Positions 1,236 to 61,100 are shown, counted from the first letter of the stretch. The stretch: 64,000 bases of DNA from Macrostomum lignano (GCA_002269645.1 NIVC01001834.1:1-64000); one strand, 5' to 3'. Notes: generated by a model from the sequence alone, not told the origin. Numbers and translations: made by a program.

Positions 1236-1264
1236 ACCTTTCTCATTCGTTTATCTCACTCTAA

Positions 1265-2050
1265 AGGGAGATCGCTTGCGCCGTTACTGTCGCTTGCGCG
1301 GCTCAGCGTGCTTGGCTACGCCGACGATCTCGCCCTCCTTTCCTCCACCGTCGAGGGCGCCCAGCGCCAGCTGGACCGGCTGGTAAGCGTTGCGGCGAGC
1401 GTCGGCCTGGTGGTCAACACGCAGAAGACCGTTGTGCTCTGCGTACCGGACGACATCGAGGCTGCAATTTTCTGCCGAGGCGCAGACGCGCAGGTGACGA
1501 GGCTTCCGCGATGTCAGCAGTTCGTCTATCTCGGCGGTCTGGTGCCTGACGTTCGTGAGGACCTGCGACTTTGCTATGGATTTGCCTGTGCTGCCTTCCG
1601 TTCCGTGAGGGCTGTCCAGCAGTCCGAGGCCCTGCCTGACCGCCAGAGGGCGGCGTTGTTCCAGGCGGTGATCGAAACCGTACTGTTGTACAACGCCGAG
1701 ACCTGGACCCTGACTGATTCACTCGAACAGCAGGTCGATGCGGCGCACGCTGGCCTGCTGTGCGCCGCCTTCAAGATCGGCTACGAGCGAGTCACCAATG
1801 CGGCACTCTATCGCCACACCGGCCTGTCCCGTCCCAGCGAAATGTTGCGCCATCGGCGACTCCAGCTGGCAAGGCCATATCATCTGAGACGAGTCGTACT
1901 GCCCACAGCCGGTGCAGAAAGTGCTTTTGCTCACGCTGCAGGAACCCTACCGGCGGGGGCAGGCCCGCACTCGGCGTTTCGTCGACTGCCTGCTGGCTGA
2001 TGCCGGCGGTGCGGCCTACGTTCGCGCCCAGGCCCTGAAACGCGCCCTGT
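1265..2050 (+). mobile_element. 5'-truncated RTE/RTEX-like non-LTR retrotransposon fragment (RT C-terminal half)
   Basis: ORF 1233..2000 contains GYADDLALL...VNTQKT...FVYLGG...ETVLLYNAETWTL; frameshifted near the 3' end; same family as 61490-63470. Confidence 0.9.
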
Positions 2051-11818: not shown

Positions 11819-12908
11819 TCAAAAAACAACAGATCTCCTTCGACCCATCCTGTTCAATTCCTTGACGGCGGCATCCTGCTGGCTCTGATTGTCTTCTTCA
11901 ACGGGCTGCTCTGTTAAATCGCCGTTGCTCAGTCGTCTCTGAAATTGCGGATAAACAGGGGCAGTGAATTCGGCACATCGATGGGTTTTAATGCTGAGAA
12001 ACATTACAATTTAAAGCATTATTTACCCCTTGATTGAGCAGTGTTTTTAGTAGAGGAGACTTTTCAAAGGTGGATAAACGTTCGGTTAGCTTCAGGACTT
12101 TTTCTTTCAGTTGTCCGACTTCAATGGCCCTCTGTTTATCTCTGGTCTTGAGCTTCATCAACAAATTATTGATTTCTTTTAGTTCGGAGTCCTTTCGCTG
12201 CAGCTCCTGTTGGAAGCGCTGCACCGTGAGCTCCAGGTGGCCATCGGTACCCGAGCAGTAGTGCTCATCGAGCTGCGACATTGCCACGTTCGTCTGACAC
12301 CCGATGCTCTGTCGGTACTTGCAGTCGCTCGGTCTCTCCGGACAGGTCATCAGGTGCTCCTGGAACTCCGAGCGGTACAGCCTGCTGCTCGAGTCGCTGC
12401 AGTGAGGACACGGAGCTCGGAACTCGGAGCAGCAGTGAGGAGATCGCAGATCCGTGTGGCAGCCGTTCAGCTCGAACTGACGGACTCGTTCCGAGCAGCG
12501 GTCGCACGTGACGAACGCGAACTGGCACTCGTTGGTCAGATGAGAGTCCAGCTGCCTCAAGGTGAGCTGCTTCTCACAGCCGGACTCTTCGTTCGAGCAT
12601 CGGACTTCAAGTTCGAGCACGTCCTTTCGTGTTGCAGTGTCGGGGAAGCAGACAGCCTGACTCACGAAGTGCTCAACAAGTCTCGCACGGTCTCTGCAGC
12701 TGTCTAGCGAACGAATGCATGGGCAGACTCGATCGCTGGATTGCAGCAGCTCGGTGCTGAAGCACCGCTGGCACAGGCGGCATCCGTGCGGAGTCTGGTA
12801 GCAGTTGACTAGCAGCTCTGAGCAGCCGCTGCACTTGAAGCGGTCCGGAATTGGCTCGTTTCGAATTTTGATAGAAGATAAATCGCTTCGCACTAAAGCT
12901 TGCTCCAT
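11819..12908 (-). CDS. TRAF-like protein copy 2; exons 12908..12027 and 11938..11819
   Basis: ORFs 11988..12908 and 11819..12004 are offset by exactly 6559 nt from copy 1 and keep the same splice sites. Confidence 0.85.
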
Positions 12909-16549: not shown

Positions 16550-17325
16550 AAAGGGAGATCGCTTGCGCCGTTACTGTCGCTTGCGCGGCTCAGCGTGCTT
16601 GGCTACGCCGACGATCTCGCCCTCCTTTCCTCGACTGTCCAGGGCGCCCAGCGCCAGCTGGACCGGCTAATAAGCGTTGCAGCGAGCGTCGGCCTGGTGA
16701 TCAACACGCAGAAGACCGTTGTGCTCTGCGTGCCGGACGACATCGAGGCTGCATTTTTCTACCGAGGCGCAGACGCGCAGGTGACGAGGCTTCTGCGATG
16801 TCAGCAGTTCGTCTATCTTGGCGGTCTGGTGCCTGACGTTCGTGAGGACCTGCGACGTCACCGTGGATTTGCCTGGGCTGCCTTCCGTTCCGTGAAGGCT
16901 GTCCTGCAGTCCAAGGCCCTGCCTGACCGCCAGATAGCGGCGTTGTTCCAGGTGGTAGAAACAGTCTTGTTGTACAACGCCGAGACCTGGGCCCTGTCTG
17001 ATTCGCTCGAACAGCAGGTCGATGCGGCGCACGCTGGCCTGCTGTGCGCCGCCTTCAAGATCGGCTACGAGCGAGTCACCAATGCGGCACTCTATCACCA
17101 CACCGGCCTGTCCTGTCCCAGCGAAATGTTGCGCCGGCGACTCCAGCTGGCAAGGCCATATCATCTGAGACGAGTCGTACTGCCCACAGCCGGTGCAGAA
17201 AGTGCTTTTGCTCACTCTGCAGGAGCCCTACCGGCGGGGGCAGGCCCGCACTTGGCGTTTCGTCGACTGCCTGCTGGCTGATGCCGGCGGTGTTCGCGCC
17301 CAGGCCCTGAAACGCGCCCTGTGAC
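16550..17325 (+). mobile_element. RTE/RTEX-like fragment (cassette copy 3)
   Basis: ORF 16595..17281 begins LGYADDLALL. Confidence 0.9.
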
Positions 17326-19294: not shown

Positions 19295-20071
19295 ATGAAG
19301 ATCCTCAAAAACTTCCCGGCAATCCTGCTCGAGCTGCAGTGCTTTCTAACCTCGGTGACGGCTGGCAGCAGCCAGTGCTCATCGCAGCAGGCATTCACAG
19401 CCGTGAACGCCAGCCTGTGCATCGGCAGCGAGTTCACGGAGACGCCCCTGGGCAGCAGCGCGGCAGCATCGGAGGTCCTGTGCTCGCTGCTCTGCGCCAG
19501 CAGGCCCCGCTGCCAGGCCTTCAGCTTGGCCCGCGGCTCCTGCCAGCTGTTCGTGTTCGACAGGTGCAGCAAAGGCGTGCGGGACTGCAGCGCCAGCTGC
19601 TCGGCCTCCGGTCGGGTCTTCGTGAAGCAGCGGCCGGGCCTGCCGCCTGGAAAACTTTGCCCGCCTGAGTTCGATTCCCAGCGGTGCGGGGTTCGCTACC
19701 GGCTGGTGAACGGCACGGCCGGCTGGCAGAGGGGCCGGCATGTCTGCGCCAACCAGACCGGCCTCGTCATCATGGCCGACGTGCTGAACGCTGAGGAGCT
19801 GCGCTTCATCAGCTCCCAGTTCAGCGGCCTGAACATCTGGCTCGGCGGCCACCAGGAAGAGGGAAGTCCCGAGCCAGGCGGAGGGTGGCGGTGGCTGGAC
19901 TGTGGTCTGGAGTTCGATCCCAGCCTGTGGGCTGCAGCTGAACCAAATGACGGTGGAAATGCCGAGAAGTACATTCTCCACTACTCGGGCACAGCCGGCC
20001 TGGTAGACGCACCAGAAACGCTGTCTTTCCCAACGAATGCCCTGTGCGAGTGCGTCTCGCCGTTTGAATGA
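19295..20071 (+). CDS. Secreted PAN/apple + C-type lectin domain protein, 258 aa, single exon, intact
   Basis: Hydrophobic signal peptide; PAN-like SEVLCSLLCASRPRCQAFSL..CQL; CTLD with W...R.VC, IWLGG, WRW, WAAAEPND and LCEC. Confidence 0.85.
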   Translation: MKILKNFPAILLELQCFLTSVTAGSSQCSSQQAFTAVNASLCIGSEFTETPLGSSAAASEVLCSLLCASRPRCQAFSLARGSCQLFVFDRCSKGVRDCSASCSASGRVFVKQRPGLPPGKLCPPEFDSQRCGVRYRLVNGTAGWQRGRHVCANQTGLVIMADVLNAEELRFISSQFSGLNIWLGGHQEEGSPEPGGGWRWLDCGLEFDPSLWAAAEPNDGGNAEKYILHYSGTAGLVDAPETLSFPTNALCECVSPFE

Positions 20072-20701: not shown

Positions 20702-21770
20702 TCAAATACGCCATTCAATAGACATCTTTCGCCTCATTCTGTTCGATGAAGTAATCGATTCTTTGACCACGGTATCCTGCTGGCTCTGATTGTCTTCTTC
20801 AGCGGGCTGCTCTGTCAAATCGCTGTTGCTCAGTCGTCTCTGAAATTGCGAATAATCAGGGGCAGTGAATTCGGCACATCGATGGGTTTTAATGCTGAGA
20901 AACATTACAATTTAAAGCATTATTTACCCCTTGGTTGAGCAGTTTTTTTAGTAGAGGAGACTTTTCAAAGGTGGATAAACGTTCGGTTAGCTTCAAGACT
21001 TTTTCCTGCAGTTGTCCGACCGAATTATTCATTTCTTTTAGTTCGGAGTCCTTTTGCTGCAGCTCCTGTTGGAAGCGCTGCACCGTGAGCTCGAGGTGCC
21101 CGTCGGTACCCGAGCAGTAGTGCTCATCCAGCTGCGACATTGCCATGTTCGTCTGACACCCGATGCTCTGTCGGTACTTGCAGTCGCTCGGTCTCTCCGG
21201 ACACGTCATCAGGTGCTCCTGGAACTCCGAGCGGTCCAGCCTGCTGCTCGAGTCGCTGCAGTGAGGACACGGAGCTCGGAACTCGGAGCAGCAGTGAGGA
21301 GACCGCAGATCCGTGTGGCAGCCGTTCATCTCGAACTGACGGACTCGCTCCGAGCAGCGGTCGCACGTGACGATCTCGAACTGGCACTCGTCGGTCAGAT
21401 GAGAGTCCAGCTGCCTCAAGGTGAGCTGCTTCTCACAGCCGGACTCTTTGTTCGGGCATCGGACTTCAAGTTCGAGCACGTCCTTTCGTGTTGCAGTGTC
21501 GGGGAAGCAGTCGGCCTGACTCACGAAGTGCTCAACAAGTCTCGCACGGTCTCTGCAGCTGTCTAGCGAATGAATGCATGGACAGACTCGATCGCTGGAT
21601 TGCAGCAGCTCGGTGCTGAAGCACCGCTGGCACAGGCGGCATCCGTGCGGAGTCTGGTAGCAGTTTATGAGCAGCTCTGAGCAGCCGCTGCACATTAAAT
21701 GGTTCGGGATCGGCTCGTTTCGAATTTTGATGGAAGAGAAATCGCTTCGCACTTTAAAAGCGGACTTCAT
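20702..21770 (-). CDS. TRAF-like protein copy 3; exons 21770..20928 and 20839..20702
   Basis: ORFs 20889..21770 and 20702..20905 with conserved splice sites; 14-aa deletion in the coiled coil; different N- and C-termini. Confidence 0.85.
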
Positions 21771-32694: not shown

Positions 32695-34700
32695 AGCAAT
32701 CCGGCCGAGTGGCAGGCGGAGTTGTGCAAGCTGGATCTCCCGCCCGGTCGGATGGCTTTTATCCTTGATGGCGTTGCTAGTGGCTTTCGCATCACCAATC
32801 GTCAGATGTGTGGCAACGCGCTGGTTGAGGTGGCAAACTACTCATCGGTTTTAAGCACCAAGACAGGGTCGCGCGTCAGATTGCTAATGAGCTTCGTCTC
32901 GGTCGTTATCGTCTCTGCGCTGTTGGTGACAAACCTCGCGTAGTCAGCGCCCTTGGTGCGCTGCCGAAATCCAACGGTGGCGTTCGCTTAATCCATGACT
33001 GCAGCCGGCCGCAAGGGAAGTCTGTCAATTCTGCTTACGAGAGCGAGCAGAGACTGCGTTTCACCTGTGTCCAGAACTTCGCTAAGAGGCTTAAGGAGAA
33101 TTACTTTATGTGCAAGGTCGATCTCAGCGAAGCCTATCGTTCATGTGGGATCCATCCTGACGACCACAAGTTTACCGGTTTGAAGTTTCGGCTAGGTAGC
33201 GATGCTTGCGACACCTACATGGTGGACACGCGCCTGCCATTTGGCGCTGCTGCTTCCGTCACGGCTTTCTATCATCTCAGCGAGGCGATCAAGTTGATGA
33301 TGGTGCACCGCGGTTTCGTCAATACTGAGGCCTATCTGGACGATTTTGCCTTTTTGCGGCTCGCAAAACGAGTGCGAGGCCTTCTTTAATGTGTTGATGT
33401 CGCTGATAGCTGCTCTGCTAGCCCAGAGGTGGAAGACTCTCTGGTTCAATAGCGATTTCGATGCCGCGATCGAGTCGGACGCCTGCCTGGTGGGCGGCGC
33501 AGCCGTGCTGCGGTTGCCGGGGGCGTGAGCGACTGGCGCTACGTTAATTGGGACCTCGACGCAGATGCTGTTTTTCGGGATCTGCTAATCAATTACAAGG
33601 AGGCTGTGATACCTCTGACGGCGTCGTTGTCGTGGCGGGACTGCCTGCACAACTGTCGGCTGTGCATCTACTGCGATAATATGGCAGCGTGCTGTATTAT
33701 CAACAATGGAGTCTCCAAGTGCCCTCTGGTGATGAGGCTGTTGCAGACGGTGGCGCTGCTTTGCATTCATTAGAACATTCGGCTGCGTGCTTATCGCGTG
33801 CCAGGGCCGTTTCAAATTTTTGCCGACGCCGCGTCTCGGCTGCATGAGGGCAGTCAGTTGTTGAATTTTTTGCTGTGCTATTATGGTTCATTGATGCGTC
33901 TCACCAATTGCTCGCTTGCCCGGCACACGCATTCTGCTGCAAAAGCTTTGGTCTCTGGTTGACAAGGGCGACAATCAGCAACTGCCCTGCTGGGCGGTCA
34001 ACATCACTGCCTGGTGGGGAATGCTGCGAAAATCGTCACTCCTTCGGTCGTCGCCTCAGTTGGGTAGTGGGATGAAGGTCCAAAATCTGGCACCTCACCG
34101 TTGCGGCCTCCTCTTAAGCGTGGACTTTGGCAAGACTATTCAGTTCCGAGATCGAGTCCATCACGTCCTGCTTCCGAAGTTCCCCGCCTGCCCCGCGCTC
34201 TGCCCGGTGGTGGCGATTTGCCGACATCTGTGTGTCAACAAGCTGGCGATGGCCAAGGCGCCACTCTGGTCCTTTATCAATCGTAATGGACAGCGGCGGC
34301 ATCTAGCTGCTCGGGACTTGGACCGGTTTCTTGACTCTAAGCTGCAGAGGGCTGGGTGTGGCGGCAAGCTCTACTCGGCTCACAGCCTGCGACGAGGTGG
34401 GGCCACCTGGGCAGCTCGCATGGGCCTGCCGGTGGCGGGGATCCAGCGGATCGGCGAGTGGAAGAGTTCGGCGGTGGAGCGCTACTTGCCCCACTCGGGT
34501 GTTGCCACTGCTGCGGCCTCTCTGCGTTTTTCTTCCGCCCTTAGTGCTCATTTTTGACGGTGGTCTTCCCGCTGGTTTGGTTTTTGCTCTGTGCCTAGCT
34601 GCTGGTCTTAGCCCCCGTTGTGTTTGGCTTTGGAGGCCTGCTTCGTTTCTGTGCCAAGTTCGCGTTTTAATGCCTTTGTTGCTGGGAGCACTAAATGGAT
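32695..34700 (+). mobile_element. Decayed, 5'-truncated DIRS-superfamily (Ngaro-like) tyrosine-recombinase retrotransposon: RT, RNase H, YR
   Basis: KVDLSEAYR, DTRLPFGA, YLDDF (33108..33389); RNase H-like IYCDNMAAC..INNG (33525..33773); YR ORF 33916..34557 with HSLRRGGAT and GEWKSSAVERY; many frameshifts. Confidence 0.85.
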
Positions 34701-35024: not shown

Positions 35025-35400
35025 TCTCTCTCTCTCTCTCTCTCTCCATGAGTCTCTCCTATCTCTCCATGAGTCTCTCCTATCTCTTCCTGAGTCCCTC
35101 CTATCTCTCCATGAGTCTCTCCTATCTCTCCATGAGTCTCTCCTATCTCTCCATGAGTCTCTCCTATCTCTCCCTGCGTCTCCTATCTCTCCATGAGTCT
35201 CTCCTATCTCTTCCTGAGTCCCTCCTATCTCTCCATGAGTCTCTCCTATCTCTCCATGAGTCTCTCCTATCTCTCCATGAGTCTCTCCTATCTCTCCATG
35301 AGTCCCTCCTATCTCTCCATGAGTCTCTCCTATCTCTCCATGAGTCTCTCCTATCTCTCCATGAGTCTCTCCTATCCCTCCCTGCGTCTCTCCTATCTCA
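35025..35400. repeat. (CT)n plus 22-bp minisatellite (CCATGAGTCTCTCCTATCTCT)
   Basis: Tandem units read directly. Confidence 0.95.
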
Positions 35401-35899
35401 GAATCTCACCTCATGTGAGATTCATTCAAGCTCTAGATATCATACATTCGACCATAAATTCTCTGAATTGAAGCGGATTTCCCTAGGGCTAAAAAAATTC
35501 TAACGCGACCAGTGAATTAATGTTTTACATGTTCGAGTACATCTGCATCAGTCTTAGAACACTAGGAGCTCCCTGTCTGCTGGTCGCCTCTAACCATGTT
35601 AATTAATCTAATTTGATTGCTCTTCAAAGGAGGAAAGAACCGGAAAGCAGCTCTTTATATAGTTTCATTTGTACCAGCTGTGCTTCCTCTTATGCTATCT
35701 TCAAAAGCCCAACCGACTAGATAGGTGAAATTTTTTAACACATTTCAATGCGTACTGACGACGAATGTTAATGTATATTTTGCTGAGTGCATAAGCCACA
35801 ACAAAAATTTACGAAAATAGCTGCTAGGCTATCGCGAACAGAAAGTGCGATCGATACTGCGATTAGATAAACATAAAAGACTAGATTTAGATTAACCCT

Positions 35900-36402
35900 A
35901 GTTATCACCGGACTGCACGCTGCCACCCCCTCCCCTCTCCAGTTATCATCGGACTGCACACCGCCACTCCCTCCCCTCCCCAGTAATCATCGGACTGCAC
36001 ACCGCCAACCCCTCCCCTCCCCAGTTATCATCGGACTGCACGCCGCCAACCACTCCCCTCCCCAGTTATCATCGAACTGCACGCCGCCACCCCCTCCCCT
36101 CTCCAGTTATCATCGGACTGCACACCGCCAACCCCTCCCCTCCCCAGTTATCATCGGACTGCACACCGCCAACCCCTCCCCTCCCCAGTTATCATCAGAC
36201 TGCACGCCGCCAACCACTCCCCTCCCCAGTTATCATCGGACTGCACGCCGCCACCCCCTCCTCTCCCCAGTTATCATCGGACTGCACATTGCCACCTCCT
36301 CCCCTCTCCAGTTATCATCGGATTGCATACCGCCACCCCCATACCTCCCTAGTTATCATCAGACTGCACACCGCCACTCCCTCCCCTCCCCGGTTATCAT
36401 CG
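35900..36402. repeat. ~40-bp minisatellite (AGTTATCATCGGACTGCACACCGCCAACCCCTCCCCTCCCC)
   Basis: About 12 tandem units. Confidence 0.9.
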
Positions 36403-36498
36403 GGCTTTAAAAAATCGCTTAGCAAGGAACAATACGAGCTGCACATAGAAAGCAAAAAAACAATTAGTTAATGTTGGACACGTAAGCCAAAGTCTTAG

Positions 36499-36872
36499 TC
36501 AAACAGACGTACAGGTGACAGTCACGAGCTGTGTAACCTGCTCCTGGTCTGCGCCGTCATTTCGATGCTGCAACCGGCCCTGCAGCTGGCGCATCTGCAA
36601 GCCGTCGTTATTTTCAACGTAGGCCAACGCCGAAGACGACGTGATGGAAGCCAGCGGAGCAGCCGCTTCCTCATCGCCAGCCGCCCCGACAGACGACCGG
36701 TGTCGCCTCCTGCGACGCCTTGACGATCGAATCGAATCTTCTTTGATCAAGTCGTCGTCTTCTTTGGCTTCGATTTCGAATTGGTTGACACTCTTGTAAC
36801 TATGGCTACCATGACGGGAATGACGACTTCTAACCCTGCTTTGATTCTGGTAGTTGTTGCAGTTGTTGCTGC
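36499..36872 (-). pseudogene. Original C-terminal tail coding sequence of the GPCR, separated from it by a LINE insertion
   Basis: After removing 36885..37156 and one TSD copy it is open and in frame with the GPCR, ending VTVTCTSV-stop. Confidence 0.85.
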
Positions 36873-36884
36873 TCTGCTTCTGCT

Positions 36885-37156
36885 TTTTTCTTTCTTTCTT
36901 TCTTCTTCAGCGCTCGTCAGCGGCGCGGCGGCGCCGAAATAGACGGGGGCCAACGCCCCATGTTCCGGAGGAGCGAGAGGGCCAAGCCCGGTTCGGTGAG
37001 GAGGCGCTCCACTTCAGTGCCGACCAGGCGAGTGCGGTGCGCGTCCCCCCTCGGGCAGCTGTAGATCGCGTGCAGGCTCGAGTCCGGTGCCCCGCAGTCC
37101 TGGCAGAGCGGGGAGTCCGTCAGGCCGAAACGGTGTCGGACCTCGGCGGCGAGCAT
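36885..37156 (-). mobile_element. 272-bp 5'-truncated LINE 3' end with (GAA/GAAA)n tail and 12-bp TSD
   Basis: Encodes HRFGLTDSPLCQDCGAPDSSLHAIYSCP...LSLLRNMG (LINE ORF2 zinc knuckle); TCTGCTTCTGCT at 36873-36884 and 37157-37168. Confidence 0.9.
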
Positions 37157-38276
37157 TCTGCTTCTGCTGCTGCTGCTGCTGTTGGAGGCTGGCTGCCGCC
37201 ATCTGCAGCTTCTGCTTGTTAAAAAGGCTGCGCAGAGCTCGACGAAACTTGACGCCGAAAAAGCAGTAGAGCAGAAAGTTAATCGACGAGTTGACGACAA
37301 CCATGAACTGCGCCACGATGTAGAAGGCCTGCTGCCCGTGGCTCGGAGGCTGCGACCTGAGGGCCACGGCCCACAGGTTGTCAACTAGAGCGAACGTCTG
37401 GCAGAAGACAAAGACGACAACCACGCTAGCCAGCATGAGGCTGATGCTGCGGTCGCGGTCCTGCCGCTTCTGCTGATGGCTGTGCCGGCCGACGATGCTG
37501 CCCTGGGCTCGCCGAGTGGACTTGCGGATCTTGTGCACCAGCAGAGCGTTGGACACGGCCAGCACAAGCAGCGGCAGCACGAACATGAACACCGAGTACA
37601 TGAAGCCGTGGTAGATTCTCTGGTATAAACCATCGCCTTCCAGGCTCCAGTTGGTAACGTTGCCGTCTGAACCGGGCAGCGCGCTGACGAACCTGATCTT
37701 CTCCAGCGCCCTGGGCACATTGTACAGCGCCGTGAAGGCCAGTATGGCGACCACCACTCGGACAGCTCGGCCGCGTTTGCACCAGGCCGCCGATCGGAGC
37801 GGGAACTTGATTGACAGGTAGCGTTCAACAGTGAAACAGGTGGTGACGTACATGCTGCACATGTGGATGAACAGTGACAGCGGGTACAGCACCTTGATTG
37901 ACGGGCTATTTGACTGCATGAGGCCGGAGAACACGGCTGACACCTGCGGCAAGCCCATGCAGATGTCGAACAGCAGCAGGATCACAATGTCCAGGCTGGC
38001 CAGGGCGATCAGGTACACGGATGTTGACGAGGCCATGCGCGGGGTGAGTAGAACCCGGATGCTGAGCAGGTTGCCAGCGATGCCCAGTCCGCTGAGCCCG
38101 GTGCCGGCGCAGCCCCACAGGTAGTACTGCAGATTGTTGAGGCCCCGCAGAGCCGCCGACTTAGCGCTGCTGTTCTGCGAACTGTTCTGGAGTTTGGAGA
38201 CTGTTGATGATGGAGTCTGCGACTGGCACAGCGGCAGCGACAGGATTAGCAGCAGCAGTGGCAGCGGGTAGCGCAT
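37014..38276 (-). CDS. Class A neuropeptide GPCR (FMRFamide-receptor-like), 420 aa as present, last ~47 aa LINE-derived
   Basis: Seven hydrophobic segments with GNLLSI, LASLD, TVERY, YNVPR, FVLP, VFCQTF and NSSINFLLYC; ATG at 38276 just after the acceptor TTTACAG. Confidence 0.9.
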   Translation of the reverse strand: MRYPLPLLLLILSLPLCQSQTPSSTVSKLQNSSQNSSAKSAALRGLNNLQYYLWGCAGTGLSGLGIAGNLLSIRVLLTPRMASSTSVYLIALASLDIVILLLFDICMGLPQVSAVFSGLMQSNSPSIKVLYPLSLFIHMCSMYVTTCFTVERYLSIKFPLRSAAWCKRGRAVRVVVAILAFTALYNVPRALEKIRFVSALPGSDGNVTNWSLEGDGLYQRIYHGFMYSVFMFVLPLLVLAVSNALLVHKIRKSTRRAQGSIVGRHSHQQKRQDRDRSISLMLASVVVVFVFCQTFALVDNLWAVALRSQPPSHGQQAFYIVAQFMVVVNSSINFLLYCFFGVKFRRALRSLFNKQKLQMAAASLQQQQQQQKQNARRRGPTPFRPDGLPALPGLRGTGLEPARDLQLPEGGRAPHSPGRH

Positions 38277-38559: not shown

Positions 38560-39430
38560 CTCCATTACACCCACACTCACGCTCACCCTCTCCCCTCATT
38601 ACACTCACCCCTCTCCCCTCATTACACTCACCCATCTCCTCTCATTACATTCACCCTCTCTCCTCATTACACTCACCCTCCCCCATTACACTCACCCTTC
38701 TCCCCTCATTACACCCACCCTCTCTCCTCATTACACTCACCCTCTCCCCTCATTACACTCACCCTCTCCCCATTATACTCACCCTCTCTCCCTCATTACA
38801 CTTACCCTCTCCTCATTACCCTCTCCCCATTACATTCACCCTTCTCCCCTCATTACACTCACCCTCTCTCCTCATTACACTCACCCTCTCCCCTCATTAC
38901 ACTCACCCTCTCCCCATTATACTCACCCTCTCCCCCTCATTACACTCACCCTCTCCCCATTATACTCACCCTCTCCCCCTCATTACACTTACCCTCTCCT
39001 CATTACCCTCTCCCCTCTTTACACTCACCCATCTCCCCTCATTACACTCACCCTCTCTCCTCATTACACTCACCCTCTCCCCTCATTACACTCACCCTCT
39101 CCCCATTATACTCACCCTCTCCCCCTCATTACACTTACCCTCTCCTCATTACCCTCTCCCCTCATTACACTCACCCATCTCCTCTCATTACACTCACCCA
39201 TCTCCCCTCATTACACTCACCCATCTCCCCTCATTACACTCACCCATCCCCCCTCATTACACTCACCCATCTCCCCTCATTACACTCACCCATCTCCCCT
39301 CATTACACTCACCCATCTCCCCTCATTACACTCACCCATCTCCCCTCATTACACTCACCCATCTCCCCTCATTACACTCACCCATCTCCCCTCATTACAC
39401 TCACCCATCTCCTCTCATTACACTCACCCA
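38560..39430. repeat. CT-rich ~23-bp minisatellite (CTCATTACACTCACCCATCTCCC)
   Basis: Tandem units read directly. Confidence 0.9.
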
Positions 39431-44625: not shown

Positions 44626-44929
44626 GATCAATCAATTAAATATTTTTATACAAAAGCAAACATTTGACGCCAAGTTAGAAAATGGACATCCAAATTTACA
44701 AGCCTTATAGAGCTAAGACAGGTAACCATACTAATTCCTAGACCTGTCTAAATAATTAAATTTAGACAATTTTTACTAACATCATTTCTTTCATAGTGTT
44801 CTCGATCTAGTCTTTTGATTTAAAAAGACTATCAATATTTAAGCCAGGCCTACCTTAAGGCCTGATGCGCAAATCAAAAGAAATTGGACCAGCAGTTAGA
44901 GTTGGATGTTCTGCGTTCGCTTGTAAATC

Positions 44930-45725
44930 GGCCACTCTGCAGAACGATGATCCTCGCGAGGAGCGGCCGAGTTTGGCCGTCTCTGACGGAGTCGTTGCTG
45001 CTGTTCGACGCCACGTGGACGAAAATCGGCGAGTGACGATTCGCTGGTGTGAGCAGCTCGTCGGGGTGTCGGATTCCACCATCATTAAGATCCTGCACCA
45101 GCACCTCTGCATGAGGAAGCTGTCCGCTCGCTTGGTGCCCCACCCGCTCAGCCATGACCAGATGCGAGCCCGCGTTGAGTTCGCCGACCTCATGGCGACC
45201 AGATTTGACGGAGGCCGCTCAAAGTTGGTGGATAACATCCTCACTGGCGATGAAAGCTGGGTCTACTTCTATGACCCAGAGACCAAAGAGCAGAGTGGGC
45301 ACTGGGTCACCAACAAGGAAGATGCTCCTCTCAAAGTTCGTCGCGAGCGCAGCGTCAGAAAAGTGATGGCGGCCATTTTCTTCCGAAACAGCGGCATCCT
45401 GCCGCCAGTGCTGCTGCAGCAAGGCGCCACAGTGACGGCAGAATGGTACAGCACCGTCTGCTTGCCAGAGGTTCTGCAGGTGCTTGCACAGCAGCAGCCG
45501 AATACGCTTTACAAACGCATGTTCGCCCATCAGGACAACGCTCCCGCACAACCGGGCACGAGTGACCCAGGAGTTTCTTCAGGCGACCCAACTCGTCCAG
45601 CTGCCGCATCCGGCATATTCGCTTTCCCAGGATGAAGAACAATCTGAAGGGGAAGCGCTTAGACTCGAGGGAGGAGCTGGTTGTTGCGCTGCAAGCTGAG
45701 CTGGACAGCTTCACCAAGGCATTTA
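44930..45725 (+). pseudogene. Mariner (Tc1/mariner) transposase relic
   Basis: SARLVPHPL (WVPHEL-like), TGDESWVYFYDPETKEQS, HQDNAP, then a frameshift to HPAYS with the second part of the YSPDLAP motif deleted; no TIRs found. Confidence 0.9.
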
Positions 45726-50200: not shown

Positions 50201-51535
50201 GCCTCAAAATTAATGTGACTGCACTGGGAATCGAGCCTGGGCCGCTGGCACATCAGAGCGTCGCGCCAGACCACTGGGCTACGGCCCCACCCTCATGCAG
50301 TGACTCACCGGGGCTGGTAGGCACCAATAGGAATGGCGGCAAGTTTCATTGGCCCGTAGAGCCGGCCAATCTGTTTGAAGACATCCGCCTGATATCCGGT
50401 GTCGCCGCCAAAGAACACGGCAGAGTTGCCATGCCGCAATACGTAGCTGCCCCACAAACTGCAGTTTTTATCAAACAGATTCCTGCCGCTCCAGTGACTG
50501 CTGGGAGTGAATATAATTTCTAGATTCGATTCCGGCAGGACTACCGACTCCCACCAGGACAGTTCGTGCACCTGTCAGTCAATGTCAAACATAAAGGATA
50601 ATAAAATATATTCACGACCTCGTGAAACTGTAAGAGCTTGAAGTTACATAAAACATGACAGTAATAAAATGAGTTCCTAAAAATGAGTTCCTAGAAATCC
50701 TAAAAATGCATGGCCCAGCTCGACTCATTGGTTTATGAATGATCTATTTATCTTCTCTGTTACACATATTGTTACACAGAGTCAGATAAGAATGATAGAA
50801 TAGATTTATAAAACCAATGAGCCGAGCCGTGCCATTTTAATGGTTTTTGGGCACAGAAAATATGCAATTGTACGTAGAACATAACTGCTCAGATTAATAA
50901 GGCTCAGCAATGTAGCAAACATTTGCAGAGTCAAATACAAACTACTACTAACTAACCTGGTTGGCAGGCACTCCGCAGTACTTAGTCATCCACCAGGCGT
51001 CTCCCACCGGCACATAAAAGTGCAGCCAAGGCTGAAGCTCGCGCAGCTGATTCAATGTGGCTCGGTCCATGTGATCGAAATGATTATGGCTGATGCAGAC
51101 AGCCAGGAGGTTGGGCAGCTGCTCAGGCGAGCATGGAGCCGGTCGCTGCCGCTGCGGCCCAATCCAGGACACAGGCGACGCCCGGCTGCCAAGCAGGGGA
51201 TCGAACAGTACGCGAACTTCGTTAGAAAAAGTGAACAAGCAGCTGGCGTGTCCCAGCCAGGTCACGGACACGGATTTGTTGTCGCCAAGTGATAAGGAGA
51301 AATCCGGCCGAGTCACTGGCAGGCGAATGTCGAGCTCGCGTGGGTCCGGCACAGGTGGGCGGTTGCGATACCGGGAACTCATCAGGAACATGAGGTAGCG
51401 CAGAGGGCTGGGCAGTGGGAACTCCCACGGATTGCTGAATTGGGTCAGCAGAGTCCAGCCAAACAGTTTTGGCTCCCAGCGCTGCGGCTTGACAAGCCTG
51501 CTGTCCAAAGCCAGAGGATCAGTTGCTGCTGGCAT
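47211..51535 (-). CDS. NAPEPLD: N-acyl-phosphatidylethanolamine phospholipase D; exons 51535..50957, 50571..50309, 49799..49682, 47315..47211 (354 aa; 374 aa if ATG 51595 is used)
   Basis: Motifs FSNPW, VTWLGHAS, DPLLGSRASP, SHNHFDH (HxHxDH), HWSGR, FGGDTGY, IPIGAYQPR, QHVSP.EAV, IHWGTF, LLQPP. All introns are GT..AG with matching phases (0, 2, 0), and the total 1065 nt is divisible by 3. Confidence 0.92.
47690..48235. repeat. Purine-rich degenerate tandem repeat (GGGATGCAGGGAGA) in NAPE-PLD intron 3
   Basis: Direct reading. Confidence 0.85.
48850..49640. repeat. 27-bp minisatellite (GGTCACACCTGAGACACGTGAAATGAT) in NAPE-PLD intron 3
   Basis: Tandem units read directly. Confidence 0.95.
50020..50290 (-). 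mobile_element. tRNA-derived SINE family A in NAPE-PLD intron 2
   Basis: Minus-strand head GGGGCCGTAGCCCAGTGGTCTGGCGCG...GGCTCGATTCCCAG (A and B boxes); body shared with the cassette copies. Confidence 0.85.
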
Positions 51536-51544
51536 GGGTTCCAG

Positions 51545-51735
51545 CTGGGGGGTCGCCACACACTGGCAATTATCTCGGCTAATGCTGGCACCCATTTTAC
51601 AGCTGGGTGAACTGAAGCAATGCAGAGTTAAGTGTCTTGCTCAAGGACACAACACAAATTGTTCTGGGTAGGTCAGGAATTGAACCCCAGATGTTTCAGT
51701 TGTGAGTTTGACATTCTAACCACTAGACTACAACC
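51545..51735 (-). mobile_element. 3'-truncated SINE family B immediately upstream of NAPE-PLD
   Basis: A box TAGTCTAGTGG, B box GGTTCAATTCC, body GTCCTTGAGCAAGACACTT..CACCCAGCTGTAAAATGGGTGCC; homology stops 9 nt before ATG 51535. Confidence 0.9.
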
Positions 51736-55142: not shown

Positions 55143-58100
55143 ATGGATCAAAGGTGCAGGTAAAATCTCTAATACTTATACTACTAAGCAAAACCTTATT
55201 ATCTAGCCAACATAAATGACTAGCCTTAAGTCCCGTCTCCACTAACACCCACTCCACCAGCAACTCCACCAGCAACACCCACTCCACCAGCAACTCCACC
55301 AGCAACACCCACTCCACCAGCAACTCCACCAGCAACACCCACTCCACCAGCGACACCCACTCCACCAGCAACACACTCCACCAGCAACACACTCCACCAG
55401 CAACATCACTCCACCAGCAACACCCACTCCACCAGCAACACTCACTCCACCAGCAACTCCACCAGCAACACCCACTCCACCAGCAACACCCACTCCACCA
55501 GCAACACACTCCACCAGCGACACCCACTCCACCAGCAACACTCACTCCACCAGCAACTCCACCAGCAACACCCACTCCACCAGCAACTCCACCAGCAACA
55601 CCCACTCCACCAGCGACACCCACTCCACCAGCAACACACTCCACCAGCAACACACTCCACCAGCAACATCACTCCACCAGCAACACCCACTCCACCAGCA
55701 ACACTCACTCCACCAGCAACTCCACCAGCAACACCCACTCCACCAGCAACACCCACTCCACCAGCAACAACCACTCCACCAGCAACATCCACTCCACCAG
55801 CAACACCCACTCCACCAGCAACACTCACTCCACCAGCAACTCCACCAGCACTCCTCCCACCGGACTCTACGTCCGGTCTACGAATTTGTCGTAGCTCCTA
55901 CTTGGCGCCGCGTTTTCGTCGCGGAGGAGAAACACGCCCAATGGGGGTGTACGAAGAGCGCCATAACTCGGACACCGCGTCCAGCGAGCGTGATTGCACT
56001 GAAAGAGGAGCGCGTATCGGTTCTAACACCGGGGGAGCCAAGTATCCGGCCCGCTACCTCCCCGCTCTTCTGTTGCTCAAGGCCGGCGATGTTGAGACCA
56101 ACCCGGGGCCTGCTAACAGCTGCGGACACGTCAGCTGCGGCCGCCCTCTGCGCGGCAAGTTCCTCACCTGCGCGAGATGTAACAGCCGCTTCCATCTGCA
56201 GAGGGAATGCTCCGCGGGTTGAGTCGCTGGGCCGCGAATAAGGCCGCGGACGCCCAGGAATGGCACTGCGCCAATTGCGAGAACGGCCCCACCACCCAGA
56301 CAGACTCGTCGTCCTCTGACCAACCGTCCACCCCTATCTTCCAGCCCACGGAGAAGCACACCGCTCGCAGGCAAGCCCTGCTCAACCGTATCCGGCAGGA
56401 GAAACCAAAATGCAACCATTGTCGGAAACCGATGCGCGTCAGCTCCACCATCGCCTGCCGCAATGCCTGTTAAGGATTCTTCCATAACGCCTGCATGCAA
56501 GCCACGTGCGACCAGATCAAAAAAGAAATCAGTCGTGGGCTTTGGAGATGCGGTCGCTGCACCGAAGCCGCCTGCCTCCAAGGCCCGCCCGCCCTCCCCT
56601 GAGGACCCTGACCCCCACTCCTGTTTGGGGGGGGGGAGCCGCCCGGAAGCTGGGTGGGACTGCAAGAAACCCGAGCTCAAAATTATTCAATGGAATGCGG
56701 ATGGGATCAGCAACAAATGGGGGAGCTTGAGGACCTCGCATCCCGGCTTCAGGCCGACGTTATTGCGGTTCAAGAGTCGAAGCTCACCTCATTCAACAAA
56801 ACCCCCCGCATCCCGGGCTTCAGCACCATCCGCAAGGACCGTAAAAGCGCCCTCTGCGACCGAAACGTTAAATGCGGCGGCCTGCTCTTCATTATCCGGC
56901 AAGGCATTTCGTTCAATAAACTTCAAGGATGGTCTGGCGGAACCACCGAAGGCTGCAGAATTTCGATCAGCAGCTCGGCCAGACAAAAACTTGTCATCTC
57001 AAACATCTACCGCCCCCCATCCGGCGCGTGGAAGGCGAAGATCACCGTGAGTACCCCAGTGTCGATTCCTGGCTCAGATGCTTCCACAGGGAAATTCTGC
57101 TTGGTGACCTCAACCTCCACCACACTGCCTAGGGCAGCGATCCCAATCAAGGACCTAAAGGTGCAGCACAAACTCAGTGCCTGGTCGACTGGTGCAACTC
57201 CGTGGACTACCGCATCCTGAACTCAGGGGAACACACTTGTGTTGACAGGCGCACCGTACGGACTAGTGATCTCGATCTCACCATCGCTAGTCAATCAGTG
57301 GCCGACCTCTGTAAATGGCAACCGCTAACCGAGCTCGGCTCCGATCACCAACCCATCCTGGTGACAGTCCGGGAATTCCGTGAAACCCTGAGCACTGCGC
57401 CTCGCTTCAGCTGGTCTTGGAAAAAAGCGGACTGGACCGCTTACCAGACCCTGCTCTCCGAGGACGCCGACTACCTCAATGGCGGCTCCATCAAGAAACA
57501 GATTGCCAGGCTCAGCTTGGGCATGCTTAAAGCAGCCAAAGCTGCTATCCCGCTCAAAAAAGTTTCTGCCAAAAACAAGCCATACTGGGATGAAGAACTC
57601 ACTGAACTTCGCGACACTCGGAACCGGCTTAGGGAATCTGGCGCTCATCCTGGCGAGTGGCTCGAAAAAAGTCACGAACTATCCAAACTCTGTGCCGAAA
57701 AGAAAGCCGAATTCTAGAAAGGAGTACATCAACAAAATGTCCGACTCTGCCGACCCAAAACAAGTCTGGAGGACTGTCAAGTGCCTCAGAAACGGCAAAC
57801 AACAAGCTCCTCTCAATGAATCTCTCGTTGTTGATGGTCGAGAACTGCGCACGGACAAGGAAAAGGCTAACGTCTTTGGCCGCTATTACGAAAAATCAGC
57901 ACTCTGAAACACTCGGCGGTGGACCGCAAGGTCAAAGTGGCCACGTCCCGTCGACTGGCCTCCACTGACGACGACCTTTACTCCCGTGATTTCACCCCTG
58001 GTGAGCTGAAACAGGCCATTGGCAAACTTGACCCCAGCAAAAATGTGGTCCCGACGAAATCGAAGCTGCCTTATTCATCCACCTGCCGGACTCTTGGATG

Positions 58101-61100
58101 ACGGCCTGGCTGGCCGTCTTCAACCGTTGCTGGCGCACCGGACACTGCCCTGGAGTCTGGAAAAAGGCCGTTATCGTCCCCCTGATAAAGGACGGAAAGG
58201 ACCCCAAAGACCGCGGTAGCTACAGGCCTGTCAGCCTCACCTCCATCTGCAGAAAGATCCTCGAACGGCTTATCCTCGATCGTCTCTAACGCTGGCTCGA
58301 GCTCCACAACATCATTCAGCCCTGGCAAGCCGGTTTTCAACGGCGATGAAGTCGCGGCTGTGAAGAGCAAATCGCCCGCCTCGTTCAGTCAATTCAAGAT
58401 GGATGGGAGAAACGCCCGCACTTGAAAACTGTGGCCGTCCTCATCGACTGCTCTCGCGCCTTTGACCGTGTTTGGCGCGCTCGCCTTATTAGTCGCATGA
58501 TGGACGAAGGCGTCCCTGCCTGTATGGTGCGCTGGTTCACCAGCTTTTTCGAAGGCAGGCAGATCGCTGTGCGGGTCGGCTCCTCACTTGGGAAATGGCG
58601 CAGACTGAGGGAAGGCGTCCCCAGGGCGCCGTCAGCTCGCCTGCCCTCTTCCTCATCTATGTTAACAAGTGGTCCGGTCACACCGTGCCTCTCGTCGACT
58701 ACAGTGGCTATGCAGACGATCTCGCCCTCTGGAGCACAGGCCGGATCGAGGAATGGGCCGCTCATCTGCGCATCGACGTCAACCCTTCTAAAACTGAGAG
58801 ATGCCTCTTCTCTCGTGACAGATCCGACCGTCAACGCAACCTCAGCCTCACCCTCCGGGGCCTACAGATTCCTTTCAAGCAGGAGATTAAGTTTCTCGGA
58901 ATCTGGATTGACCAAGGTCAGCTATTCGAAAAGCAAACTGACTCCGTCCAGGAGAAAATGCTTTGCCGAGCTGCCATCCTCCGTGCCCCAGCCCACCGTG
59001 AATGGGGCTGGGATCGCAAGCTGCTGCTGCGAGTCTACTGGGCTCTTGTGGAATCCGTCGTGTGGCACGCCGCCGCAACCTGGACGCCTTGGCTATCTGC
59101 GACCCGTCTCAACGCCATCGAACGTGCCCAGCGTGAGGCCCTCCGGGTTGTCACTGGTCTCCCCCGCTCGACACCGGTAGAGGCCATCTACTTTGAGTCG
59201 GGAATCCTTCCTATCAGCCTCGAAGCCCGCCGAAGATCGCTGCTTGCGGTTGAGAAGGCGCTCCGAAGACCTCCCGGCGAACCCTTCCGGCAGCTTTGCG
59301 AACGCCCGCCACGACACCCTGCTTTCTGCCAACCGAGGCCTCCGCGAACAAGCTAGACGCATCACCGATGAGCTCCTTGGTGGACACCGCCTAGCCAACA
59401 GCCACATCCGGCTCCCACCCTGGAATTCGTTAGCCGACGCCGGAGGGCGCATGTTCACCAAGCTGCTGTTCGAGCCCATTGAAACCGCCGTCGCCCAGGC
59501 GGTCCAAGCCACCGCGACCGCGCGCTGCCCGAACGCCGCCACTTACTTCACCGACGGATCCGTCTCGGGTGGCGTTGAAAACGGAGGTGCGGCCTGGATT
59601 CTCCTGAGCCAGGACGGCTCTATCAGCCGGCGCGGGCGCGTGGCCGCGGGCCGCTGGTGCAGCTCCTTTGAGGCCGAACTTCCAGGCTCTAAGCGACATC
59701 ATTGCCAATGCCCCGAAAGAGGCTGCCATTCTCACCGACAGCCAGAGCGCTATCGCGGTCCTCCAAGCTGATCCCCAACCATCAACCTGCTCGTCGAGAA
59801 CGTTAACGAACGCCTTATCACCGCCGCCCGTCTTTTTAAGATCATCCTGCAGTGGATGCCCGGGCACGCCGGAATCCTCGGAAATGATGAACTGGTGGAT
59901 GCCGAGGCTAAACTAGCGGCCACGCTGCCTCAGGAACATGTCGGCACCACCCTGGATTCGGCTAGGGCCCGCATCCGCCGGGTTGTTAACCATTCGCCCA
60001 ACATGACAGGCCACCTGCTCGAGGTATGGCCAAAAGATTACGACGCATGAGGGCCCTCGCAGGCAACAGGTCTTAGGTCTGCGCCGGGCACTGTCCTGCA
60101 TCGATCTACTACCGCAACCGCACCGGCATGGAGGTCGGGGGCAACTGCCGTCTCTGCGCGGAAGAGGTCGATCAATTCCACCTTCTCAACTGCCCGGCCC
60201 TGGACGTCCAACGCCGTACTCACGGCATTACCGAAATGTGTCGACTCGCTCGCGCCGACGTGGTGGCGCTTCTCCAAGCGGCCATCGGTTGGTGTCCCCT
60301 TTAAGAGAGGGGACCGCATACAACAACTCCACCACCAATACCCACTCCACCAGCAACACCCACTCCACCACCAACACCCACTCCACCAACAACACCCACT
60401 CCACCAGCAACACCCACTCCACCAGCAATTCCACCAGCAACACCCTCTCCACTATTAAAACTTCAGCCGGAGTTGCGACCCCTGCTTGCTAGGTACTGGC
60501 CGCTGCTCGTGCTCAGCTGGTGCATGGAGCTCAGTCTTGGCGCAGCCATCTCAATGCCCGGACCGACGCTGCCTTACCTGGCCTTGAAAGTCTCTGAACC
60601 AATCGAACGTCTCGGTTTTATGTTCACGGGCAGTTCACTGACCTCCTGCTTAGCTGCCTGGCTGACTGGCCTGGCCTTGGCTCGACTCACTGATAGCAGT
60701 CGGGTTAAATTAATCGGCTTGTTGCTAGGCAACGGGCTCCTAGTTGCTGCCCTAATTGCGACGCCTTCGGCTGACTCGCTTGCTGGACTAATCGCGGCCC
60801 AGTGCACAATGGGAGCTGGAGTTGCCGTAATTTCTACAGGTATGTCTTCGCTGCTGAATGCAAGGAAGTGTTCACTTTTTAGCCAAATTTACAATATCTT
60901 ACCTCACGGACCACTAGAAGTTACCGTTGTACTGTTATTTTTATCGGTACGAGTATAACGGTAACTAGTGATCCTTATGCATGTACGGTGATAAAAGCAT
61001 CTTTCCCGCCTGCAGTGGACAACATGCTGATGATTTACTTGTTCGGCCCGATCCTATCCCGCTCTCTGTCGCATTCTCTGCACTTCTGCGTCGGACTTGG

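What the first reader, a model, noticed from the sequence alone, without database searches (positions are those of the whole stretch)
36499..37168. A LINE insertion replaces the C-terminal tail of a neuropeptide GPCR
Seen: a 272-bp LINE 3' end (36885..37156) in the gene's orientation sits at the end of a polyQ run, flanked by a perfect 12-bp TSD. Excising it restores a 497-aa open frame continuing QKQSSNNCNNY...RSSRRRRRRHRSS...VTVTCTSV. As it stands, translation enters the LINE out of frame and stops at 37014 (420 aa). Established: Ser/Thr-rich GPCR tails are GRK/arrestin sites, and terminal T-x-V is a class I PDZ ligand. Inference: all seven TMs and helix 8 survive, so this allele may encode a receptor with altered desensitisation or localisation. 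The undecayed old tail implies a recent, possibly polymorphic insertion.
Basis: partly seen in the sequence, partly recalled or inferred. Interest (0 to 1): 0.75.

Follow-up and report, generated by a model that had tools for sequence, protein, structure and literature searches.

The report
LINE fragment truncates a GPCR tail
A short, recently inserted piece of a LINE retrotransposon sits in the coding exon of an invertebrate FMRFamide-receptor-like GPCR and swaps its last 124 residues for 47 unrelated ones; this is a real but ordinary kind of mutation whose effect on the receptor is untested.

Summary
A single-exon rhodopsin-class GPCR lies on the minus strand (Met 38276, or 38390). It is interrupted after codon 373 by a 272-bp insert (36885..37156). 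The insert is flanked by an exact 12-mer, TCTGCTTCTGCT, that occurs nowhere else in the 64-kb window. The insert carries an open 79-codon frame with a CX2CX7HX4C-P motif, a stop, a 32-nt 3' end and a purine/A-rich tail next to the duplication. This is the anatomy of a 5'-truncated LINE. Precise excision restores a 497-aa frame ending in ...CTSV. As it stands, the frame shifts and stops at 37014 (420 aa).

The Pfam 7tm_1 match, family-invariant residues and helix 8 all lie upstream of the insertion. The nearest relatives are at most 42% identical and carry names such as "FMRFamide receptor-like". Their tails cannot be aligned, but 34 of 150 end in [ST]-x-[VLI] against a 3.6% background. This supports the restored C-terminus as the ancestral one.

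No empty allele, close orthologue or second copy of the LINE could be found, because the species appears absent from the collections. Recency, polymorphism and functional effect therefore remain inference. Verdict: a real, ordinary exonic LINE insertion, a new member of a known kind, of low to moderate interest.

The parts
37158..38276 (-). Native coding sequence of the GPCR kept in this allele: codons 1-373, comprising a signal-peptide-like N-terminus, the 7TM core, helix 8, 21 residues of native tail and the polyQ run. An in-frame upstream ATG at 38390 would add 38 residues.
   Evidence: ORF list and translation. Pfam 7tm_1 E=1.7e-23, residues 74-337. Alignment with 13 relatives, invariant columns through R345. 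Shared prefix of 373 aa.
37157..37168 (-). Upstream (in gene orientation) copy of the 12-bp target-site duplication, AGCAGAAGCAGA on the gene strand. It encodes part of QQKQ.
   Evidence: The 12-mer occurs only twice in the window.
36885..37156 (-). 272-bp 5'-truncated LINE 3' end, in the same orientation as the gene. It holds 79 codons of an ORF2 C-terminus (36920..37156), a stop (36917..36919), a 32-nt 3' end and a purine/A-rich tail (36885..36908). GC content is 71%, against 60% for the receptor core.
   Evidence: No other copy is in the window.
37055..37105 (-). CX2CX7HX4C-P motif (CQDCGAPDSSLHAIYSCP) in the insert's own reading frame. It has the same spacing as the ORF2 C-terminus of the in-window LINE at 60146..60193.
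   Evidence: Six-frame motif scan. BLASTP E=8e-4 for the single comparison. Smith-Waterman score 45 against 23.5 +/- 4.4 for shuffles, reached by 4/5000.
37014..37016 (-). Stop codon used by the receptor frame in this allele. It ends a 47-residue Pro/Arg/Gly-rich tail read from the LINE out of the LINE's own frame.
36873..36884 (-). Downstream copy of the 12-bp target-site duplication, directly abutting the A-rich tail.
36499..36872 (-). Displaced ancestral C-terminal tail: 124 codons counting the split first codon, then the stop at 36499..36501. It is still open, has 23 Ser/Thr, an RSSRRRRRRHRSS stretch and ends in -T-S-V.
   Evidence: Family-wide enrichment of [ST]-x-[VLI] ends.

Best explanation
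**What happened (shown).** A non-LTR retrotransposon (LINE) inserted by target-primed reverse transcription into the single coding exon of a rhodopsin-class, FMRFamide-receptor-like GPCR. The insertion lies 21 residues after helix 8, at the end of a CAG-encoded polyQ run. Only the last 272 bp of the element were copied (5' truncation), and 12 bp of target were duplicated.

**Effect on the reading frame (shown).** The receptor frame now runs 47 codons through the element in a frame that is not the element's own, then stops. The predicted product is 420 aa. It has an intact 7TM core and helix 8. It lacks the ancestral 124-residue tail, with its 23 Ser/Thr, its basic-Ser cluster and its terminal T-S-V.

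**Timing (inferred).** The event is young. The duplication is perfect, the displaced tail is still an open frame, and the element's own 79-codon frame is unbroken.

**Consequence (inferred).** If the allele is transcribed and the protein folds, it should still bind ligand and couple. It would lose most GRK/arrestin phospho-acceptor sites and any PDZ-scaffold anchoring. That predicts slower desensitisation or internalisation, or altered localisation. Loss of surface expression, or simple neutrality in a large redundant receptor family, is about as likely.
For: - Insert boundaries, exact 12-bp duplication and restored 497-aa frame. The duplication 12-mer is unique to the two junctions in 64 kb.
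- A purine/A-rich tail abuts the downstream duplication. A stop lies 32 nt upstream of the junction, preceded by an open 79-codon frame with CX2CX7HX4C-P.
- The same motif spacing occurs at the end of another LINE in the window that has an RVT_1 domain: RVT_1 at 58595..59356, motif at 60146..60193. Pairwise E=8e-4; 4/5000 shuffles reach the score.
- The downstream frame is open in only 1.6% of shuffles.
- Receptor identity and integrity: Pfam 7tm_1 E=1.7e-23 over the full profile; 6970 homologues with a best identity of 42%; named relatives are 'FMRFamide receptor-like' from Tubulanus and Lingula. The query agrees with relatives at 49 of 59 near-invariant columns, including ERY and NFLLY.
- Relatives have a median of 98 residues after the TM7 motif. 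The reconstructed form has 160 and this allele keeps 36 native ones.
- 34/150 relatives end in [ST]-x-[VLI] against a 3.6% background.
- Tail isoforms of a lophotrochozoan neuropeptide GPCR differ in Ser/Thr-phosphorylation-dependent desensitisation (PMC11365428).
Against: - No second copy of the element is in the window. There is no Pfam, PDB or protein-collection match to its peptide. The family assignment therefore rests on architecture and one weak similarity.
- No empty allele or close orthologue was found. The ancestral state is reconstructed, not observed.
- The receptor departs from its relatives at 10 of 59 near-invariant columns. Examples are ERYLSIKFPL instead of ERYIAVCxPL, and no Cys after helix 8. 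It may already have been evolving under relaxed constraint.
- There are no expression data. No AATAAA or ATTAAA was seen within 2 kb downstream.
Confidence: 0.85

Rival explanations
1. Same insertion, but the allele is simply a null or neutral allele. On this reading the receptor is one of many fast-evolving, lineage-specific FMRFamide-receptor-like paralogues. The tail swap abolishes export or stability, or the gene was already dispensable, so this is an early-stage pseudogene rather than a receptor with altered regulation.
For: - The closest relative anywhere is only 42% identical and 6970 homologues exist, which is typical of large, rapidly turning-over families.
- 10 of 59 family near-invariant positions are changed, including the Cys after helix 8.
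- The gene sits among transposons and minisatellites.
- The new 47-residue tail is Pro/Arg/Gly-rich and unrelated to any receptor tail.
Against: - The 373-codon native part and the displaced 124-codon tail are both still open.
- ERY, NFLLY and the helix-8 motif are intact.
- From general knowledge, many class A receptors tolerate tail truncation distal to helix 8.
Confidence: 0.45
2. The insert is removed from the mRNA by splicing, so the ancestral tail is still made.
For: 241 GT..AG pairs spanning the new stop would restore the frame by arithmetic alone.
Against: - None of the 17 distinct donor sites is GTAAG or GTGAG.
- Acceptors near the insert follow purine-rich sequence. The best pyrimidine fraction is 0.69, at a site far inside the old tail.
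- The only CAG|GT donor (37356) would also delete TM7.
Confidence: 0.04
3. There was no insertion event. The 12-mer repeat is a chance product of the CTG/CAG-rich sequence, and the downstream open frame is accidental; or the segment is an assembly chimera.
For: - The duplication lies in low-complexity CTG-rich sequence, with 83%-identical near-copies nearby.
- No second copy of the element is available to define its ends independently.
Against: - The exact 12-mer occurs only at the two junctions in 64 kb.
- It abuts an A-rich tail on one side and the start of a GC-rich (71%) segment on the other.
- Excision restores a frame that is open by chance only 1.6% of the time.
- That frame ends in a motif enriched at the C-termini of this family.
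- From general knowledge, misassembly does not create target-site duplications.
Confidence: 0.04

Closest known systems
5'-truncated LINE insertions into coding exons by target-primed reverse transcription (for example de novo human L1 insertions in F8 exon 14; from general knowledge)
   Same: Only the 3' end of the element is present. An A-rich tail abuts a short perfect target-site duplication. The insertion is in sense orientation inside an exon, and the host frame is shifted into a premature stop.
   Different: - The element family is unidentified, with no database relative.
- The tail is a (GAA/GAAA)n-A5 run rather than a long pure poly(A).
- The hit is distal to all structural elements of the protein, so it swaps the tail rather than destroying the fold.
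FMRFamide-receptor-like / Srw-related rhodopsin-class peptide GPCRs of protostomes
   Same: Pfam 7tm_1 and 7TM_GPCR_Srw matches are above their cut-offs. ERY and NFLLY motifs and the KFRR helix 8 are shared with relatives. Named relatives are 'FMRFamide receptor-like'. A [ST]-x-[VLI] C-terminus is frequent in the family.
   Different: - Identity to any relative is at most 42%, and the ligand is unknown.
- 10 near-invariant positions are changed, and the Cys after helix 8 is missing.
C-terminal tail variants of GPCRs that change desensitisation: Aplysia tachykinin-related peptide receptor isoforms A/B (PMC11365428), and CXCR4 tail truncations in WHIM syndrome (from general knowledge)
   Same: The 7TM core is the same and only the intracellular tail differs. 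Loss of tail Ser/Thr removes phosphorylation-dependent desensitisation.
   Different: Those variants arise by alternative splicing or by nonsense and frameshift mutation, and their effects were measured. Here the cause is a retroelement and nothing has been measured.
Retroelement disruption of a neuropeptide GPCR: canine narcolepsy, a SINE insertion in HCRTR2 (from general knowledge)
   Same: A retroelement insertion alters a neuropeptide-type GPCR in a natural population.
   Different: That insertion is intronic, causes exon skipping and produces a non-functional receptor. This one is exonic and leaves the core intact.

Membership tests
Rhodopsin-class (class A) GPCR | Match to Pfam 7tm_1 above the gathering score, covering TM1-TM7 | tested here: met
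   83.9 bits against a cut-off of 30.5, residues 74-337, profile positions 7-260 of 260.
Rhodopsin-class (class A) GPCR | E/DRY at the end of TM3, an NPxxY-type motif in TM7, and an amphipathic helix 8 | tested here: met
   E151-R152-Y, N333-F-L-L-Y337 (the family's own NFxxY variant) and KFRRALRSLF at 343-352. These columns are invariant or nearly so across 14 sequences.
FMRFamide-receptor-like peptide GPCRs | Closest relatives are members of that group | tested here: met
   Best hits have E=3.7e-56 to 1e-40. The named ones are 'FMRFamide receptor-like' from Tubulanus polymorphus and Lingula anatina. These names are automated annotations, not tested functions.
FMRFamide-receptor-like peptide GPCRs | Activation by an FMRFamide-type or other neuropeptide | not testable with these tools
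   Needs ligand screening of the expressed receptor.
Non-LTR retrotransposon (LINE), 5'-truncated copy | Target-site duplication flanking the copy | tested here: met
   Exact 12 bp at both junctions, unique in the window.
Non-LTR retrotransposon (LINE), 5'-truncated copy | A-rich or simple-repeat 3' tail at the junction, in the orientation of the element's ORF | tested here: met
   GAAGAAGAAAGAAAGAAAGAAAAA at 36885..36908 on the gene strand. The stop of the internal ORF lies 32 nt upstream of the junction.
Non-LTR retrotransposon (LINE), 5'-truncated copy | ORF2 C-terminal Cys-His motif (CX1-3CX7-8HX4C) | tested here: met
   CQDCGAPDSSLHAIYSC at 37055..37105. The spacing is shared with the in-window RVT_1-bearing LINE. 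That this motif is typical of LINE ORF2 comes from general knowledge.
Non-LTR retrotransposon (LINE), 5'-truncated copy | Sequence homology to reverse-transcriptase-bearing elements, and other copies in the genome | tested here: inconclusive
   There is no other copy in the window. There are no Pfam, PDB, protein-collection or viral-contig hits. The one metagenome hit is a spurious match in a high-GC contig of metabolic-looking genes with no retroelement ORF upstream. The only support is the weak similarity to the in-window LINE (E=8e-4). The rest of the genome was not available.
Class I PDZ ligand | Free C-terminus [S/T]-x-hydrophobic | tested here: met
   The reconstructed end is -T-S-V. The same pattern is found in 34/150 relatives against a 3.6% background, binomial P about 1e-17. 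The relatives are not phylogenetically independent.
Class I PDZ ligand | Binding to a PDZ-domain protein | not testable with these tools
   Needs peptide-array or pull-down experiments.

The most novel reading that the evidence does not exclude
The insertion is a segregating, functional allele. It would be a naturally occurring 'tail-less' neuropeptide receptor that signals longer or from a different membrane domain, because it has lost its phospho-acceptor cluster and a family-typical PDZ ligand. It would be maintained at appreciable frequency, a WHIM-like gain of function created by a LINE in a wild invertebrate.
Probability: 0.1. Interest if true: 0.5.

Novelty: new member of a known kind. 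Interest (0 to 1): 0.25.

Why it matters
If the allele is expressed, it is a ready-made natural experiment. The same 7TM core exists with and without its Ser/Thr-rich, PDZ-ligand-bearing tail, in a receptor family whose tails are otherwise unalignable and unstudied.

The side result may be the more general point. About a quarter of the nearest relatives end in a class I PDZ-type motif. This suggests that scaffold anchoring is a recurrent feature of this protostome receptor group.

Otherwise this is a textbook example of how young LINE insertions remodel coding ends. It is useful for annotation, because gene predictors will either truncate the gene or invent an intron here.

Tried and rejected
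- **Whole-protein search.** The full 497-aa reconstruction against the 5.8-billion-protein word index returned nothing. A repeat without the Leu-rich signal peptide, polyQ and polyR runs gave only 35% and 29% relatives.\n- **Exact look-ups.** The 497, 535, 458 and 420-aa forms and four neighbouring ORFs are all absent from the collection. The source species seems not to be in the collections, so the 'empty allele' test could not be run.\n- **Tail comparison.** BLASTP of the reconstructed tail against the 150 nearest relatives found nothing below E=0.8.\n- **LINE peptide.** There were no hits in Pfam at E<=10, the PDB, the protein index or viral contigs.\n- **Metagenome hit.** The single hit, L001, lies in a high-GC contig of metabolic-looking genes with no retroelement ORF upstream. 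I rejected it as a chance match.\n- **Rfam.** A scan of 36400..37400 gave only a chance-level bacterial sRNA match.\n- **Splicing-out.** Considered and rejected on splice-site quality.\n- **Other receptor copies.** A search of the window for a second receptor or old-tail copy found none.\n- **Hydropathy.** A simple Kyte-Doolittle scan at a strict threshold picks up only five of the seven helices. I rely on the Pfam match and the alignment instead.

Full report
**1. What is in the sequence**

The feature lies on the minus strand. An ORF runs from an ATG at 38390, or from the more plausible signal-peptide-like MRYPLPLLLLILSLPLCQSQ start at 38276, to a stop at 37014..37016. It encodes 458 or 420 aa.

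The plus strand carries the exact 12-mer TCTGCTTCTGCT at 36873..36884 and again at 37157..37168, enclosing 272 bp at 36885..37156. These are the only two occurrences of that 12-mer, on either strand, in the whole 64-kb window.

Read on the gene strand, the enclosed segment has these parts:
- It starts abruptly with ATGCTCGCC....
- It carries an open 79-codon frame, MLAAEVRHRFGLTDSPLCQDCGAPDSSLHAIYSCPRGDAHRTRL...APPRR.
- The frame ends at a TGA at 36917..36919.
- A final 32 nt follow, ending in GAAGAAGAAAGAAAGAAAGAAAAA directly against the downstream 12-mer.

Deleting 36885..37168 gives a continuous 497-aa frame (535 aa from the upstream ATG). It reads ...QQQQQQQKQSSNNCNNYQNQ...RSSRRRRRRHRSS...VTVTCTSV*, with the stop at 36499..36501. 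The receptor frame inside the insert (NARRRGPTPF...) is not the insert's own frame.

**2. Is it more than chance?**

- The 128-codon stretch downstream of the insert is open in the restored frame in 82 of 5000 dinucleotide-preserving shuffles, or 1.6%.
- The duplication is unique in the window. It sits exactly at a composition step: the insert is 71% GC, the receptor core 60% and the old tail 54%.

**3. The host gene**

- The reconstructed protein matches Pfam 7tm_1 (E=1.7e-23, 83.9 bits, residues 74-337, profile positions 7-260 of 260). It also matches 7TM_GPCR_Srw above its cut-off.
- An exhaustive HMMER search of 1.84 billion representatives found 6970 homologues. The best is only 42% identical, and all alignments end near residue 353.
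- Among the ten best, the named ones are 'FMRFamide receptor-like' from the nemertean Tubulanus polymorphus and an unnamed GPCR from the annelid Dimorphilus. A second search adds 'FMRFamide receptor-like' from Lingula anatina.
- Alignment with 13 relatives shows the ERY motif, the family's NFLLY variant of NPxxY, and the helix-8 motif KFRRALRSLF at 343-352. The insertion follows residue 373, so the 7TM core and helix 8 are untouched.
- The receptor agrees with its relatives at 49 of 59 near-invariant columns. It differs at 10, for example ERYLSIKFPL where relatives have ERYIAVCxPL, and no Cys after helix 8. It is a divergent paralogue but not visibly broken.
- No second copy of the receptor or of its tail exists in the window.

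**4. The insert**

The anatomy is that of a 5'-truncated non-LTR retrotransposon inserted by target-primed reverse transcription. It has a perfect short target-site duplication, an A-rich tail at the 3' junction, and the 3' end of an ORF that stops shortly before the tail. The orientation is defined by that ORF and tail, and it matches the gene's.

The ORF contains CX2CX7HX4C followed by Pro at 37055..37105. From general knowledge, this Cys-His motif is characteristic of the C-terminus of LINE ORF2.

An internal comparator exists. A decayed LINE on the plus strand has an RVT_1 domain at 58595..59356. It ends with R-x-R-x-G-x5-C-x2-C-x7-H-x3-C-P at 60146..60193, has a stop 33 codons later, and is followed by a simple repeat. 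The two C-termini align with BLASTP E=8e-4 for the single comparison. Their Smith-Waterman score is 45, against 23.5 +/- 4.4 for shuffles, and only 4 of 5000 shuffles reach it.

The family could not be pinned down beyond that:
- No other copy is in the window, at DNA or protein level.
- There is no Pfam hit even at E<=10.
- There is no PDB hit.
- There is no word-index hit among 5.8 billion proteins.
- Nothing was found in viral contigs.
- The one metagenome hit lies in a high-GC contig of metabolic-looking genes with no retroelement ORF upstream, and I reject it as a chance match.

'LINE 3' end' is therefore well supported by architecture and only weakly by homology.

**5. The displaced tail**

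The allele loses 124 native residues, of which 23 are Ser/Thr. These include RSSRRRRRRHRSS, SITSSS and the terminal T-S-V. It gains 47 Pro/Arg/Gly-rich residues with 3 Ser/Thr. Only one Ser/Thr remains between helix 8 and the junction.

The tails of relatives cannot be aligned with it; the best E-value is 0.8. Their lengths are comparable, though. Relatives have a median of 98 residues after the TM7 motif (quartiles 61 and 135). The reconstruction has 160, and this allele keeps 36 native ones.

Of the 150 nearest relatives, 34 end in [ST]-x-[VLI]. The same tripeptide pattern occurs at 3.6% of positions elsewhere in their last 80 residues (binomial P about 1e-17; the sequences are under 50% identical to one another but are not independent). 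The reconstructed ...TSV end thus matches a recurrent feature of the family. This is independent support that the stop at 36499 is the ancestral one, and it suggests the motif matters.

**6. Could the insert be spliced out?**

Arithmetic alone gives 241 GT..AG pairs that span the new stop and restore the frame. None is credible:
- None of the 17 distinct donor sites is GTAAG or GTGAG.
- The acceptors near the insert follow purine-rich sequence.
- The only CAG|GT donor, at 37356, would also delete TM7.

I find no sequence support for splicing. Only RNA data can exclude it.

**7. What could not be tested**

The decisive test is an empty allele or an orthologue with the same tail. It failed for lack of data, not because of a negative result:
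- The exact 497, 535, 458 and 420-aa sequences and four neighbouring ORFs are all absent from the 15-billion-protein collection.
- The nearest homologue anywhere is 42% identical.

The species appears not to be represented. Recency is inferred from the perfect duplication, the open old tail and the open element frame. Polymorphism is only a possibility.

**8. Mechanism and rivals**

*Shown:* a retroelement fragment inside the exon shifts the frame and replaces the tail, leaving the 7TM core and helix 8 intact.

*Inferred:* if the allele is expressed, the receptor lacks most tail phospho-acceptor sites and its PDZ-type end. It should then desensitise or internalise less, or localise differently. 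A lophotrochozoan precedent exists: the two C-terminal isoforms of the Aplysia tachykinin-related peptide receptor differ in Ser/Thr-phosphorylation-dependent desensitisation (PMC11365428).

The main rival shares the structural event. It holds that the allele is null or neutral in a large, fast-evolving family, and I give it about even odds against the 'altered regulation' reading. Splicing-out, chance and misassembly are each unlikely.

**9. Comparison with what is known, and verdict**

Exonic, 5'-truncated LINE insertions with target-site duplications are a well-known class of mutation. So are GPCR tail variants with changed desensitisation. This is a new instance combining the two, in an orphan FMRFamide-receptor-like gene of an unidentified invertebrate, probably a spiralian judging by its nearest named relatives.

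It is real, clearly delimited and correctly read by the first stage. It is not a new kind of feature, and nothing functional is established. Interest is 0.25.

Noticed in passing
window 5429..6349, 11988..12908, 20889..21770 (all minus strand): Three tandem, nearly identical single-ORF genes of 293-306 aa. The first has a TRAF-type zinc finger (Pfam zf-TRAF, E=2.3e-9) and a C-terminal coiled-coil-like region. This looks like a recent local TRAF-like gene expansion. Reverse-transcriptase fragments at 1233..2000 and 16595..17281 look like parts of the same duplicated unit.
   Followed up: partly
window 35896..36403 and 38582..39429: Minisatellites bracket the receptor gene. A 41-bp unit x12.4 starts about 100 bp downstream of the ancestral stop, so it is probably in the 3' UTR. 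A 23-bp unit x39 lies about 200-300 bp upstream of the start codons. A further 21-bp x17.6 array is at 35031..35399.
   Followed up: no
window about 56400..60302 (plus strand): A decayed LINE with frameshifts. It has an RVT_1 domain (58595..59356), a C-terminal CX2CX7HX3C-P motif (60146..60193), a stop at about 60302, and then a CCACC-rich simple repeat. I used it as the internal comparator for the insert. Another RT-bearing element starts at 61870 and runs towards the end of the window.
   Followed up: partly
window 33916..34557 (plus strand): An ORF with a weak tyrosine-recombinase match (Pfam Phage_integrase, E=1.5e-5, just below the gathering score), about 2 kb downstream of the receptor. 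It may be a Crypton- or DIRS-type element.
   Followed up: no
window 44865..45635 (plus strand): Tc1/mariner-type transposase fragment (Pfam Transposase_1, E=3.7e-9, and HTH_Tnp_Tc3_2).
   Followed up: no
window 19295..20071 (plus strand): A 258-aa ORF with a signal-peptide-like start and, by eye, C-type-lectin-like features (WLGG..., EPND). Pfam gave no hit at E<=0.001, so this is unverified.
   Followed up: no
P0001-P0150 (relatives of the receptor): About 23% of the nearest FMRFamide-receptor-like relatives end in a class I PDZ-type [ST]-x-[VLI] motif, against a 3.6% background. This is a family-level pattern that may deserve its own study.
   Followed up: partly
window 50948..51595 (minus strand): An ORF containing an HNHFDHMD motif, reminiscent by eye of metallo-beta-lactamase-fold hydrolases such as NAPE-PLD. 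It is probably an exon of a larger gene. Not tested.
   Followed up: no
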